A program made the position numbers and the translations under genes. The notes under the pieces were generated by a model. It was not told where the DNA came from. It saw only the letters and a program-made list of their open reading frames with translations, and did not search any database. From Diadema antillarum (lineage: Eukaryota), in NCBI RefSeq assembly GCF_040938485.1, contig NW_027270911.1:4650001-4714000 (forward strand): a stretch of 64,000 nucleotides of DNA, written 5' to 3'. The first letter of the stretch is position 1, and each line of letters opens with the position of its first letter. Below, piece after piece: positions 12,897 through 19,707 of this stretch.

Positions 12897-14265
12897 TTAA
12901 AAGTTCTGGTGAATGAAGTGCTTTTCTGTGGTTTGTTTTGAAACTTGGAAAGAGGCCATTTTAGTGCCGTCATTTTGGCGGTTTTTTTTTTTTTCTTTCT
13001 TACTTTCTGTCATCACCATCGATGATCAATCTTAATCTGGTCGTACTACCGGGCAAGTCCTCCGCTTCCCACTATCCATTTCCAGTTGTTTATGCAGGAG
13101 TAGCCTTAGATCAAGAACCTGCCGGGTATTGTTTGTTTTTTCAATTAATGAAGTATAGGTGTCCCTACCCCCGTCCTTTATGTTTTCTTTCGTTCCCAGC
13201 GCGAAGGACCGACATGAGTGCAGGTGTTGATAAATGTGTTTGTATAGGGGAGTTGAGGGAGTTAAGGCTGATGTATGACTCCTGCCACAGGTGGTAAAGG
13301 CAAATGGTGTTTGACCGATGCCAAACCAGTCTAGCTGCTGCCAAACCAGCCTTCCCTGCTTCCCCACAACTGTCCCATCTACAGTGATAGGATGCAGCAG
13401 AAGTTTCCAATAAAATTTCAGTGATTTTCTTTTTCCCAATAAATTTTCAGCTTTAATATGTTCATCCACAAGTGCAAATGTATGTCGTGTACTTTCATCC
13501 ATGCATGGCTCATAATGTCTTATTCTTAGAAATGTCAACACAGAAAAAAAGAAATGTCTGCTGCAATATAAAAAAAATGAATAGATAGAATTGGATCAGG
13601 TAGCAAAGAAACAATAAGCTTGGTAAATAAGCTTTAGATACTATTAATGTATTACACCCGGTACTTGTCTCTGTTGATGTGATTAATGATAATTCCATGC
13701 ATCTGTCAATTTTCATCCAACAATGTGTTTGGCAAAGACGCATATTACCAAGAATAAAGTTCAGTGTTCAAGCTGAAACTTGGAGAGTCATCAACTAGAT
13801 TTGTTTACTTTGCTTGCAGCCTGTCACAAATGTACACACTAGTAGTTATATACATATGTATGATGTACTGTATGCATGGCTGTTTTAATGTGTATGTACA
13901 CAGGTTGACCAGATTCATGGAGAACATTCCATATGGTATAGATATAGTACATACAGGCTGACCAGATAAGTGGAGAATTTTCTAGGTGGTATACAATGTA
14001 GCTATACAGTACATGCATGTAACAGGAAATACATTATAGCTCACTCAATCTAGAATGATTTCACCCATTCCAGAAAGTTCTGGGAAGTGCTAACATATTT
14101 GGCTGAGTGAGGCACTGTCCCTGTAGCCCAATGTGATTGGTAGTTATTCTTGGCAGTGATGTTTTGTACATAGTTAGGCAGTGAGTCATCCAGGTTTCCT
14201 GGAACTTAGACTGGCTAGTAGGTTGGAGAGAGTTATAGAATGTGCTAGAAGGGGTGAATAGATAG

Positions 14266-14272
14266 TATATAA
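14266..14272 (+). promoter_or_regulatory. Probable LTR TATA box (copy at 19019-19025)
   Basis: TATATAA at LTR position 445. Position within U3 is inferred; the TSS is not mapped. Confidence 0.5.
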
Positions 14273-14883
14273 GCTAGAGAAATTCTGCAGTAGGCAGAGT
14301 ACCCAACACCTCTGCTCTGAGAGTTACGTCACTTCTGGCTCTGAAGCGACTTGTTATAGTCAGTCCTGTGTTACCTGCTGACCTGTTATGTTTGTGGAGA
14401 TAAGGCCTGGGAGACGTTTTGCCTGCGGAGAATTTCTTCATTGGAGATAGACTCCATGTTTTTATGTCAATGGACATTGCTACAGCAAAGCTGTGACGGG
14501 CTGGATTCCTAGCTGGACAATATAAAGTGAATCATCCTTCAACGCATCGACTGGACGTGGTCGTTGGATTCTGCACATTTCGCTGTGAACATTATACCGT
14601 GGACCTATCACATGGACATATACCTGGATTAATACCAAGGATTATCGCAACCTGCGTTTGGATTTACGTCGAAGGAATCATTCATCGGTGCATCGCGGAT
14701 CATTCATTTGTGCATTGAACATCGTATTTGGACACTTTCAAAGGATTACTTAATGCATGTAAGTGATATATTGCGTGTAATGCCTACGTAAGTAATTCCA
14801 TTACTGACTTATATTTGTTTCTTGTGATCATTATTGTACTGATGTGACGCCGATTACCAGTCTGTACCCACAATATCACTGTT

Positions 14884-14889
14884 AATAAA
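14884..14889 (+). terminator. Probable LTR polyadenylation signal (copy at 19637-19642)
   Basis: AATAAA 65 bp before the LTR end, followed by a GT/T-rich tract (GTTGATTGTTTCTTTTGTG). Confidence 0.55.
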
Positions 14890-14958
14890 CAGCCTGAACA
14901 TCAGTTGATTGTTTCTTTTGTGCGATCATTCTCAGAGTGATATTGGTCGTAACAAAAT

Positions 14959-18000: not shown

Positions 18001-18248
18001 CTATGAAGAGAAAGGCAGACAAAAATGCCAAAGCCCGAACTTTCAACCCGGGTGACAAAGTTCTTGTACTGCTGCCCATACAAGGTGAACCACTGAAAGC
18101 CAAGTTCAGTGGCCCATACTGTGTCAAAAAGAAACTCAGTGATGTGAACTATGTGATCAGCACACCAGATAGAGGCAAGCATCAGAGAATGTGTCATGTC
18201 AATATGCTGAGAAAGTGCTATGACAGAAAGTCAGTTGGTGTGACATAG
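15096..18248 (+). CDS. Gag-protease-integrase polyprotein (1,050 aa from first ATG); no RT/RNase H
   Basis: Coiled-coil and capsid/SCAN-related Gag (FDLAKNIRLVPKF...YELVPEAYRHKFR). CCHC knuckle CFHCNKTGHVKSQC (16209-16250). Aspartic protease ILRDTGASQS (DTG 16479-16487). Integrase HHCC (AHELPVGGHLG...CKTCHTC), DD(35)E at 17412/17589/17697, and a GPY motif. No YxDD RT motif, and only 326 bp between the stop codon and the 3' LTR. Confidence 0.95.
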   Translation: MSISTMDVQAFVQRTDLSLKDLQRLRKCDLTAVAQHLNVDVPQGARKAEILDLVAGHMELKEEIDTSDRAQISDQTRLELARLEIEKEKMRSEREQRAREMEMLEREKQREMEMKKFEMEQQMKLREMELTHAHAVGNRERAPSDFDLAKNIRLVPKFEENRVDAYFVSFEKVANSLNWPQEFWPLLLQSVFVGKAADVYSSLSEEQSRDYATVKKAVLNAYELVPEAYRHKFRNSYRKPGQTHVEFAREKEMTFDRWYRSLKVDQDFDNLREVVLLEEFKKSVAFSVRSHLDDHKVTSLHKAALMADEYELTHRNDNRPPFRNFSGNKRDKIQSSNPKNAGSEKGTSSETSSAPKPQSDKGSSTSANVIKCFHCNKTGHVKSQCWKLQNKTKKDLGFVMSKSVLPENSVPFSETQAIENQSPKFKDRLKQVDESYRSFLFDGEVTPCTSGEAGKPVVILRDTGASQSLMVDGGMTFPPDSAVNAKVLIQTVDGSYMSVPLYRVDLKCDLVSGPVTVGVVPELPMAGIDFLLGNDLAGDKVVASPVVSDKPVVVAETEQLQEEFPGISPDCVVTRSQARRAVQDDADSVDVEENSGVWLAETFFKDLNDGVAVLGSEANSDGLFSKSSLVEAQQADFELKGLSQTACSEAEAEKVPECYYVKDGILMRKWRPPHRPADEDWTVVRQVVVPPSYRGEILRIAHELPVGGHLGVRKTKDRIMRHFYWPGLNVDVAEFCKTCHTCQVAGKPQHSVKPAPLIPIPAFEEPFSRVLVDCVGPLPRTRSGHKYLLTIMDMSTRFPEAIPLRNITAKTVVDALVQFFTRYGLPKEVQSDQGSNFMSGIFQEVMYHLGVKQLKSSADHPQSQGALERYHQTLKTMIRAFCEEYPEDWDKGIPFLLFATRDSPNESTGFSPFELVYGHEVRGPLKLIKEKFMTEDDEVHLLDYVSKFRERLSKACEVAREHLKVLQESMKRKADKNAKARTFNPGDKVLVLLPIQGEPLKAKFSGPYCVKKKLSDVNYVISTPDRGKHQRMCHVNMLRKCYDRKSVGVT

Positions 18249-18565
18249 TAGAGGATAGCACAGTAGAATTTAAGGGTGAAAAGTTTTCATCGCAATTCAT
18301 TTCCAGTGTATGTGTTTAGCATATTCATTAATGTGTGCAAAACAGTTTGATATGATTGTATAAGCTCCAAGAATCCAAGCAATATCATTGTAAATGGTAT
18401 CCATGAAAAGAGAACATGGAATTAATGCAGCTATTCAAAAGGCATGTGATAGTATGTGATTATTGTTGCTTGACTTGGACTTTACCTCACATTCATTGTA
18501 AATAATAATGAGAAATTGTGAAGGTAAAAGAAACCCTTGCTACGGCAAGGCTTTCTTTTTCCCAT

Positions 18566-18574
18566 GGGGGATGG
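18566..18574 (+). promoter_or_regulatory. Polypurine tract (plus-strand primer)
   Basis: GGGGGATGG directly abutting the TG start of the 3' LTR, preceded by a T-rich tract. Confidence 0.75.
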
Positions 18575-19707
18575 TGTCACAAATGTACACACTAGTAGTT
18601 ATATACATATGTATGATGTACTGTATGCATGGCTGTTTTAATGTGTATGTACACAGGTTGACCAGATTCATGGAGAACATTCCATATGGTATAGATATAG
18701 TACATACAGGCTGACCAGATAAGTGGAGAATTTTCTAGGTGGTATACAATGTAGCTATACAGTACATGCATGTAACAGGAAATACATTATAGCTCACTCA
18801 ATCTAGAATGATTTCACCCATTCCAGAAAGTTCTGGGAAGTGCTAACATATTTGGCTGAGTGAGGCACTGTCCCTGTAGCCCAATGTGATTGGTAGTTAT
18901 TCTTGGCAGTGATGTTTTGTACATAGTTAGGCAGTGAGTCATCCAGGTTTCCTGGAACTTAGACTGGCTAGTAGGTTGGAGAGAGTTATAGAATGTGCTA
19001 GAAGGGGTGAATAGATAGTATATAAGCTAGAGAAATTCTGCAGTAGGCAGAGTACCCAACACCTCTGCTCTGAGAGTTACGTCACTTCTGGCTCTGAAGC
19101 GACTTGTTATAGTCAGTCCTGTGTTACCTGCTGACCTGTTATGTTTGTGGAGATAAGGCCTGGGAGACGTTTTGCCTGCGGAGAATTTCTTCATTGGAGA
19201 TAGACTCCATGTTTTTATGTCAATGGACATTGCTACAGCAAAGCTGTGACGGGCTGGATTCCTAGCTGGACAATATAAAGTGAATCATCCTTCAACGCAT
19301 CGACTGGACGTGGTCGTTGGATTCTGCACATTTCGCTGTGAACATTATACCGTGGACCTATCACATGGACATATACCTGGATTAATACCAAGGATTATCG
19401 CAACCTGCGTTTGGATTTACGTCGAAGGAATCATTCATCGGTGCATCGCGGATCATTCATTTGTGCATTGAACATCGTATTTGGACACTTTCAAAGGATT
19501 ACTTAATGCATGTAAGTGATATATTGCGTGTAATGCCTACGTAAGTAATTCCATTACTGACTTATATTTGTTTCTTGTGATCATTATTGTACTGATGTGA
19601 CGCCGATTACCAGTCTGTACCCACAATATCACTGTTAATAAACAGCCTGAACATCAGTTGATTGTTTCTTTTGTGCGATCATTCTCAGAGTGATATTGGT
19701 CGTAACA
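18575..19707 (+). repeat. 3' LTR
   Basis: 1,133-bp direct repeat of the 5' LTR, followed by TSD AGCC. Confidence 0.97.

What the first reader, a model, noticed from the sequence alone, without database searches (positions are those of the whole stretch)
13822..19707. Very young LTR retroelement that keeps Gag, protease and a DD(35)E integrase but has no reverse transcriptase
Seen: 1,133-bp LTRs with no difference found, exact AGCC TSD, PBS, PPT, and an uninterrupted 1,050-codon ORF. The ORF ends right after the integrase GPY region (HQRMCHVNMLRKCYDRKSVGVT*), leaving only 326 bp before the 3' LTR and no YxDD motif. Known: Gmr1-type Ty3/gypsy elements have the order PR-IN-RT-RH, so losing everything after IN removes RT/RNase H while leaving an open Gag-PR-IN ORF. 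Identical LTRs arise during reverse transcription, so this structure appears to have been reverse-transcribed recently. Inference: this may be a semi-autonomous lineage that makes its own particle, protease and integrase and borrows only RT/RH in trans. The non-autonomous LTR types I know best (TRIM, LARD, Gag-only) lose IN as well.
Basis: partly seen in the sequence, partly recalled or inferred. Interest (0 to 1): 0.8.

Follow-up and report, generated by a model that had tools for sequence, protein, structure and literature searches.

The report
Jumping gene lacking its copying enzyme
This is a freshly inserted copy of a sea-urchin retrotransposon lineage that lost its reverse transcriptase in one old deletion. 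It has still spread to at least about 100 places by borrowing that enzyme from complete sister elements, while keeping its own capsid, protease and integrase genes readable.

Summary
Window 13822-19707 is an LTR element with two identical 1,133-bp LTRs and an AGCC target duplication. It has one 1,050-codon Gag-protease-integrase ORF and no RT or RNase H.

- The same genome holds complete partners: a 1,550-1,575-aa ORF in the order Gag-PR-IN-RT-RH, with a YIDD active site and the same LTR ends and PPT.
- The RT-less form differs from them by one roughly 1.5-kb deletion.
- All five sequenced RT-less copies share that junction. At least 102 copies carry the lineage's own integrase tail. The four copies with both flanks in hand have different target duplications and LTR pairs with 0-1 mismatches.
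- A 95-96% identical second copy of the flanks holds the target AGCC only once, which is an empty site.
- 72 of 102 short copies keep a 1,036-1,085-aa frame, against 35 of 48 complete copies.
- dN/dS is about 0.2 in both forms.

Short copies form one clade only next to the junction. Their LTRs and 5' regions are interleaved with those of complete elements, which shows recombination.

It is not shown that the short form's own proteins are used. A related family in another assembly lost RT independently.

The scan noted another RT-less copy in this genome (s1-229792).

The parts
13818..13821 (+). 5' target-site duplication AGCC
   Evidence: The paralogous or allelic site holds it only once.
13822..14954 (+). 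5' LTR, 1,133 bp, TG..CA
   Evidence: Identical to the 3' LTR. It is 99% identical to the LTRs of complete copy L031 and about 92% to those of other short copies.
14959..14976 (+). Candidate primer-binding site (begins TGG, 4 nt after the LTR)
   Evidence: Position and conservation across copies, in two variants. The complementary tRNA was not identified.
15096..18248 (+). Single ORF Gag-PR-IN, 1,050 codons plus TAG
15771..16040 (+). Gag capsid C-terminal (SCAN-like) domain
   Evidence: Pfam PF02023, E 4e-07, aa 228-317
16203..16250 (+). Gag CCHC zinc knuckle
   Evidence: Pfam PF00098, below its cut-off. The CX2CX4HX4C spacing is visible.
16479..16487 (+). Protease active-site DTG
   Evidence: Read from the translation. 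No Pfam protease model matched.
17160..17330 (+). Integrase H2C2 zinc-binding domain
   Evidence: PF17921, E 1.7e-20
17391..17705 (+). Integrase catalytic core with D, D(35)E
   Evidence: PF00665, E 8e-14. Catalytic residues located. Private Y-to-D change at aa 861.
18093..18218 (+). Integrase C-terminal GPY/F-type module
   Evidence: PF22938, E 1.5e-09, and PF24626
17900..18269 (+). Segment linked to the deletion, where all RT-less copies form one clade; it ends at the junction 18269|18270
   Evidence: support 100/99
18270..18574 (+). 3' untranslated region shared with complete elements; PPT at 18566-18574
18575..19707 (+). 3' LTR
19708..19711 (+). 3' target-site duplication AGCC

Best explanation
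The element is a recent insertion of a non-autonomous, or semi-autonomous, lineage of a Gmr1-type Ty3/gypsy family. The host is a sea urchin according to other notes of this scan. I did not verify that independently, though the closest named proteins are echinoderm.

Shown:
- Complete family members encode one polyprotein, Gag-PR-IN-RT-RH.
- A single ancestral deletion of about 1.5 kb removed RT and RNase H up to just past the pol stop. It left a Gag-PR-IN ORF with a new stop, plus the 3' UTR, PPT and LTR.
- This deletion form has been copied to at least about 100 loci, against roughly 320 first-look candidates for an RT probe.
- The four short copies with both flanks in hand have different target duplications and 0-1 LTR mismatches.
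- The form has exchanged LTR and 5' sequences with complete elements.

Inferred: its RNA is packaged into particles built together with complete elements, which supply RT and RNase H. Co-packaging of the two RNAs and template switching during reverse transcription produce the mosaics.

Inferred and less certain: its own Gag-PR-IN polyprotein is made and contributes capsid, protease and integrase. That would explain why most copies keep the ORF.
For: - Structure.
- Complete partners and deletion map. The partners' RT has a YIDD site.
- Spread: 40 of 40 scored hits span the junction for both a 300-bp and a 66-bp probe, with 118 first-look candidates for the 66-bp probe. 102 short-type integrase tails appear among 150 scored hits. 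An RT probe gave 319 candidates.
- Real transposition: different 4-bp TSDs and 0-2 LTR mismatches in the 16 elements examined (one, L046, has no matching TSD). There is an empty site with a single AGCC at C23:2767998-2769000.
- Single origin plus recombination: short copies form one clade only in 17900-18269 (100/99). That clade is rejected for the LTR (p 3.5e-11) and for the 5' UTR plus gag N-terminus (p 2.4e-06).
- Coding constraint: 72 of 102 short copies are intact against 35 of 48 complete ones. dN/dS is 0.216 against 0.232. Segregating sites in the core have a ratio of 0.13 (p 1e-23). In the junction-linked 105 codons the ratio is 0.42 (p 0.024).
- Recurrence: a related family in another assembly has its own RT-less form with a different breakpoint, seen at two loci (L048, L052).
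Against: - There is no direct evidence of transcription across the junction, of the protein, or of particles. The only possible RNA run has contigs on gag-PR-IN and the LTR but none over 17572-18771.
- In the gag-PR-IN core, neither a short-only clade nor mixing can be established (AU p 0.149). The low dN/dS may therefore have been earned while those sequences sat in complete elements.
- The per-codon disruption rate is about 1.6 times higher in short copies.
- Identical truncated frame lengths recur on different contigs (674 aa three times, 345, 218 and 174 twice each). This suggests broken short copies can still be copied.
- Constraint in the only segment private to the short lineage is weaker than in complete copies (0.42 against 0.28) and rests on 28 sites.
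- This copy has a private Tyr-to-Asp change at the integrase loop position that is Tyr in all 14 other copies.
Confidence: 0.6

Rival explanations
1. Pure parasite. This is the same amplified deletion lineage, but its Gag-PR-IN ORF is a passenger. Every protein comes from complete elements. The ORF looks healthy only because the lineage is young and keeps receiving sequence from complete elements by recombination.
For: - Recombination with complete elements is demonstrated.
- Divergence among short copies equals divergence between short and complete copies (dS 0.0735 against 0.0737).
- The same truncated frame lengths recur at different contigs.
- The per-codon disruption rate is higher in short copies.
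- Constraint is weaker in the junction-linked segment.
Against: - 71% of 102 short copies keep the full frame, across 25 different in-frame length variants.
- The junction-linked segment, where short copies form their own clade, still departs from neutrality (p 0.024).
- An independent RT-less lineage in a related family also keeps a 1,170-1,183-aa ORF in several cluster members.
Confidence: 0.3
2. Interfering element. The short form's polyprotein co-assembles with that of complete elements and dilutes RT, so it acts like a defective-interfering genome that damps the family. It could even be favoured by the host.
For: The short form shares the Gag of the complete form, which implies co-assembly. 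It is abundant relative to RT-bearing copies.
Against: Both forms show equally fresh insertions, with 0-2 LTR mismatches. There is therefore no sign that complete elements have been shut down. Nothing here measures activity.
Confidence: 0.07
3. The deletion is the footprint of a spliced subgenomic RNA that was reverse-transcribed. On this view the RT-less form is regenerated repeatedly from complete elements rather than being a lineage.
For: Other notes of this scan report introns that remove pol in DIRS elements of this genome.
Against: - The segment missing from complete copies does not begin with GT or end with AG.
- The ~350 bp upstream of the junction form a separate, well supported clade with their own substitutions, a 9-bp gap and a new stop. 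That means one old event, not repeated splicing.
Confidence: 0.02
4. Local post-insertion deletion or assembly collapse at this locus only.
For: None found.
Against: The junction is shared by at least 100 copies. The short-specific segment is present in contigs of independent runs from two organisms. The LTRs are identical and the empty site is clean.
Confidence: 0.01

Closest known systems
Gmr1 and Gmr1-like Ty3/gypsy elements (Metaviridae with integrase upstream of RT; described from cod and other deuterostomes, from my own knowledge)
   Same: The complete partners have the order Gag-PR-IN-RT-RH in one ORF, Ty3/gypsy-type RT and RNase H, an H2C2/DD35E/GPY-F integrase and a SCAN-like capsid domain. 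Close relatives occur in echinoderms, a hemichordate, molluscs and a sponge.
   Different: The window's element lacks RT and RNase H entirely. Placement next to the original Gmr1 by RT phylogeny was not done.
Mouse IAP I-delta-1 elements (internally deleted IAP proviruses that depend on full-length IAPs and account for many new insertions; from my own knowledge)
   Same: A single shared internal deletion, an open reading frame retained, dependence on complete relatives, and success comparable to or greater than the parent.
   Different: The I-delta-1 deletion removes part of gag and pol and creates a fusion protein. Here the deletion removes only the 3'-terminal RT-RH module and leaves Gag, PR and IN whole. 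That outcome is possible only because of the Gmr1 domain order.
Plant non-autonomous LTR elements: LARD, TRIM, TR-GAG, BARE2, Dasheng, and Sabrina/WHAM (which lack RT and INT coding sequence, PMC9744471)
   Same: They are mobilised in trans by autonomous partners, with which they share LTR termini, PBS and time of activity. These are the criteria listed in PMC9744471, and they are met here. LTR exchange with partners is also discussed there.
   Different: Those types lack integrase, and most lack all pol functions. This lineage keeps protease and integrase as well as Gag, and stays about 97-99% identical to its partner in the coding region.
Defective-interfering genomes of RNA viruses and retroviruses
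   Same: A deletion genome that relies on the polymerase of the complete genome and recombines with it through co-packaging.
   Different: This one is germline-integrated and vertically inherited, and it retains three of the five protein functions. Interference is not shown.

Membership tests
LTR retrotransposon (structural definition) | Two direct LTRs ending TG..CA, flanked by a short target-site duplication | tested here: met
   1,133-bp identical LTRs and AGCC on both sides. An empty site holds AGCC only once.
LTR retrotransposon (structural definition) | PBS complementary to a tRNA 3' end, and a PPT next to the 3' LTR | tested here: inconclusive
   The PPT is invariant in all copies. The PBS candidate begins TGG and is conserved in two variants. 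No tRNA was matched, and none lies in the window.
Gmr1-like clade of Ty3/gypsy | pol order PR-IN-RT-RH in autonomous members | tested here: met
   In L031 the integrase spans aa 688-1041, RVT_1 spans 1180-1337 and RNase H spans 1401-1532, all in one 1,553-aa ORF.
Gmr1-like clade of Ty3/gypsy | Gag with a SCAN-like capsid C-terminal domain | tested here: met
   PF02023 above its cut-off in the window ORF, L031 and L041.
Gmr1-like clade of Ty3/gypsy | RT groups with Gmr1 in an RT phylogeny | not tested
Non-autonomous (trans-mobilised) LTR retrotransposon | Lacks a function essential for its own replication | tested here: met
   No RT or RNase H in Pfam. About 1.5 kb is missing relative to partners.
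Non-autonomous (trans-mobilised) LTR retrotransposon | The defective form itself has transposed: same internal structure at several loci with different TSDs | tested here: met
Non-autonomous (trans-mobilised) LTR retrotransposon | A contemporaneous autonomous partner sharing LTR termini, PBS and PPT | tested here: met
   Intact 1,550-1,575-aa copies with 0-2 LTR mismatches, the same termini and PPT, and both PBS variants.
Non-autonomous (trans-mobilised) LTR retrotransposon | Mobilisation by the partner's proteins observed directly | not testable with these tools
   Only indirect evidence: mosaics between the two forms.
LARD / TRIM / TR-GAG classes | No pol-derived coding capacity (no protease or integrase) | tested here: not met
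   The DTG protease motif and a complete integrase are present.

The most novel reading that the evidence does not exclude
Division of labour inside one retrotransposon family. Complete elements translate Gag and RT from a single ORF, apparently in equal amounts. The RT-less copies would then serve as the family's high-output source of Gag-PR-IN, so the usual excess of structural protein over polymerase is reached at the level of the element population rather than by frameshifting or splicing. On this reading the RT-less form is favoured rather than merely tolerated. That would also explain why a related family evolved one independently.
Probability: 0.12. Interest if true: 0.8.

Novelty: new variant of a known kind. 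Interest (0 to 1): 0.55.

Why it matters
Non-autonomous LTR elements are usually described as having lost all of pol. This lineage lost only the polymerase module and kept capsid, protease and integrase in about 70% of at least 100 copies. The Gmr1 gene order makes such a loss easy.

The system is natural and currently active, and it is well suited to asking which retroelement proteins must act in cis and which can be borrowed. It also gives sequence-level evidence, in the form of mosaic copies, that defective and complete genomes recombine. An independent RT-less lineage in a related family suggests the outcome is repeatable.

For annotation, such copies will be scored as intact gag-pol genes or host genes lacking RT. 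An NCBI model from Lytechinus pictus (P0005) that stops in the IN-RT linker may be such a case, but its DNA could not be examined.

Tried and rejected
1. **Programmed frameshift between IN and RT in relatives.** Many database proteins of 1,050-1,190 aa have IN but no RT. Three that I looked up (L049, L050, L051) are complete elements. In L049 and L051 the RT-RH part lies in another frame after a 1-nt indel, at a different position in each. In L050 RT-RH is a separate 340-aa ORF about 600 nt downstream. There is therefore no conserved recoding site, and such proteins are not evidence of RT-less elements.

2. **Spliced-RNA origin of the deletion.** The boundaries are not GT..AG, and the junction-linked clade is old. 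An 8-nt repeat (ATGAAGAG) lies near both breakpoints in complete copies, but the junction sequence does not match a simple repeat-mediated deletion. The mechanism stays open.

3. **Reads.** Only Logan contigs were on offer, so spanning long reads and RNA ends could not be examined. The one possible RNA run does not cover the junction. Depth dips at the junction bin, but the tool warns that depth is not copy number.

4. **More copies.** Statistics on about 100 copies therefore come from search tables (open-frame lengths), not from sequences.

5. **PBS-tRNA match.** Not resolved.

6. **Literature.** Three full-text searches found no description of an amplified Gag-PR-IN, RT-less LTR lineage. This is not proof of absence.

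7. **L047 (P0099).** A Gag-PR-IN ORF with no RT and no LTRs nearby. It is not explained.
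Full report
**1. The observation**

Window 13822-14954 and 18575-19707 are identical over 1,133 bp. They begin TG and end CA, and AGCC flanks both ends. The only long ORF in the whole 64-kb window is 15090-18248. Its first ATG is at 15096, which gives 1,050 codons. 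The stop is TAG at 18246-18248, 326 bp before the 3' LTR.

Pfam finds a SCAN-like capsid domain, a CCHC knuckle, and the three integrase modules H2C2, rve and p58_C/GPY-F. It finds no reverse transcriptase and no RNase H. The protease DTG and the integrase D, D(35)E residues can be read in the translation.

**2. The family**

The LTR has about 1,480 first-look matches in the 1.75-Gb assembly. Paired LTRs fall into two spacing classes, about 6.2 kb and about 4.75 kb.

I fetched 16 elements, and a later comparison showed one of them, L035, to be a fifth short copy.
- The long class carries one ORF of 1,550-1,575 aa. Its order is Gag, PR, IN (aa 688-1041), RT (1180-1337), RNase H (1401-1532). The RT has a canonical YIDD site.
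- The short class comprises the window copy, L041, L044, L045, and L035, which carries a 4.2-kb nested insertion. It is collinear with the long class except for one gap of about 1,485 aligned columns.
- The gap begins just after the integrase C-terminal module and ends just past the pol stop.
- All short copies share the same junction (window 18269|18270), the same 9-bp gap upstream, and the same new TAG stop.

**3. Has the RT-less form itself transposed?**

Yes.
- A 300-bp junction probe gave 40 of 40 scored hits spanning the whole probe at different loci, at 91-100% identity.
- A 66-bp probe centred on the junction gave 118 candidates, again with 40 of 40 spanning.
- A 107-aa probe of the integrase tail separates the two forms by whether the alignment reaches the short-specific last four residues. 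It returned 102 short-type and 48 long-type hits among 150 scored.
- An RT probe gave 319 candidates. On these counts, which are lower bounds, the short form is roughly a quarter of the family.
- The assembly appears to hold some loci twice. L036/L037 and L039/L040 have identical flanks, and several pairs of rows are identical. The number of independent loci is therefore somewhat lower.

The four short copies with both flanks in hand have different TSDs (AGCC, AGAA, GAAT, TAGT) and 0, 0, 1 and 0 LTR mismatches. Complete copies are equally fresh, with 0-2 mismatches and their own TSDs.

For the window copy there is also an empty site. The 500 bp on either side match C23:2768495-2769000 and C23:2767998-2768498 on the minus strand at 95-96% identity. 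The two matches overlap by exactly four bases, so that copy holds AGCC once and no element. I could not tell whether it is the other haplotype or a paralogous duplication.

**4. One origin, then recombination**

I built segment trees of 5 short and 10 complete copies.
- Short copies form one clade only in 17900-18269, directly upstream of the junction (support 100/99).
- A short-only clade is rejected for the LTR (AU p 3.5e-11) and for the 5' UTR plus gag N-terminus (p 2.4e-06).
- It is not rejected for the gag-PR-IN core (p 0.149) or the 3' UTR (p 0.42).

Concretely, the window copy has an LTR 99% identical to that of complete copy L031, but only about 92% identical to those of L041, L044 and L045. 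The two PBS variants are also distributed across both forms.

Each mosaic sits between identical LTRs with its own TSD, so the exchanges preceded or accompanied reverse transcription. The textbook route is co-packaging of two RNAs followed by template switching. That step is inferred.

**5. Is the retained ORF constrained?**

- Of 102 short-type hits, 72 lie in an open frame of 1,036-1,085 aa, with 25 different lengths. Of 48 long-type hits, 35 lie in a frame of at least 1,500 aa (Fisher p 0.85).
- Nei-Gojobori dN/dS is 0.216 among short copies, 0.232 among complete copies and 0.214 between the two forms.
- Segregating sites among short copies in codons 150-936 are 31 nonsynonymous against 69 synonymous (ratio 0.13, p 1e-23 against neutrality).
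- In the 105 junction-linked codons, where short copies are their own clade, the counts are 17 against 11 (ratio 0.42, p 0.024). Complete copies give 0.28 there.

The variation carried by short copies has therefore passed a purifying filter. For the core, I cannot say whether the filter acted while the sequence sat in short or in complete genomes. In the private segment the constraint persists but is weaker.

Several points count against strict need for the ORF:
- The per-codon disruption rate is about 1.6 times that of complete copies.
- Truncated frames of identical length recur on different contigs (674 aa three times), which suggests broken short copies can still be copied.
- The window copy has 8 private amino-acid changes in codons 150-1030. 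One is Tyr to Asp in the integrase loop motif, which reads S-A-Y-H-P-Q in all 14 other copies.

**6. Outside this genome**

Contigs of public runs labelled as two organisms cover the short-specific segment.

The closest database protein (P0001, 82% identity, 1,172 aa) lies in L048. That element has identical 1,208-bp LTRs, TSD CTTC and a closely similar PBS and PPT. Its LTR bodies are unrelated to those of the window's family, and its 5' breakpoint is different, since it keeps roughly 75-120 residues of the IN-RT linker.
- A second locus of the same assembly (L052) is collinear with it through the junction.
- Cluster members of 1,169-1,183 aa are frequent.
- Complete relatives occur in L053.
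- The L048 junction is absent from this genome.

RT loss with retention of Gag-PR-IN has therefore happened at least twice. Other database proteins that seem to lack RT proved to be complete elements whose RT-RH is read in a separate frame or ORF.

**7. Comparison and novelty**

The complete partners meet the structural definition of Gmr1-like Ty3/gypsy elements. RT-phylogenetic placement was not tested.

The short form meets the criteria for a trans-mobilised element as listed in PMC9744471: shared LTR termini, PBS and time of activity. It does not fit LARD, TRIM or TR-GAG, because it keeps protease and integrase. In concept it is closest to mouse IAP I-delta-1 elements and to defective-interfering genomes (both from my own knowledge).

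Three full-text searches found no description of such a lineage. I rate it a new variant of a known kind: solidly documented and of moderate interest. It would be of higher interest if the retained proteins prove necessary, or if the short form helps the family.

This scan has noted another RT-less Gmr1-type copy elsewhere in this genome (s1-229792).

**8. Limits and conduct**

One bench step is referred.

Noticed in passing
window 5435-6032 and 39265-40024: Two arrays of a ~157-bp tandem repeat, 33.5 kb apart, 62-93% alike.
   Followed up: no
window 56153-56282: A run of 130 N, either an assembly gap or masked sequence. Left untouched.
   Followed up: no
G000:C23:2767998-2769000 versus window 13322-20207: The flanks of the insertion recur 1.9 Mb away on the same contig, inverted, at 95-96% identity and without the element. 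This is either a misplaced second haplotype or a segmental duplication.
   Followed up: partly
L035:1976-6226: A short-form copy carrying a ~4.2-kb nested insertion in the gag N-terminal region. The insert was not identified.
   Followed up: partly
G000:C599:499202 and 503920; G000:C172:142131 and 146828: Pairs of short-form copies about 4.7 kb apart on the same strand. The spacing fits tandem LTR-internal-LTR-internal-LTR arrays.
   Followed up: no
table (C1268, C531, C549 and others): The same truncated open-frame lengths recur at different contigs among short copies (674 aa three times; 345, 218 and 174 twice each). These are possibly disabled copies that were still copied.
   Followed up: no
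L046 (G000:C116:2925118-2933472): A complete copy whose two flanks show no matching 4-bp duplication (CTAT against AAAT). It may be the product of recombination between two insertions.
   Followed up: no
L047:6001-9426: A 1,141-aa Gag-PR-IN ORF (P0099; its 90% cluster has 1,006 members) with no RT downstream and no flanking LTRs within 3-6 kb. It has a 27-nt tandem repeat in the gag N-terminus. Its status as element or host gene is unknown.
   Followed up: partly
window 17664-17681 (aa 859-864): The window copy reads S-A-D-H-P-Q where all 14 other copies read S-A-Y-H-P-Q in the integrase catalytic loop. The change is private to this copy.
   Followed up: partly
L053: In the other assembly, two family copies lie head to tail, and one lacks about 100 residues of the linker and RT N-terminus. 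Structural variants seem common in that family too.
   Followed up: no
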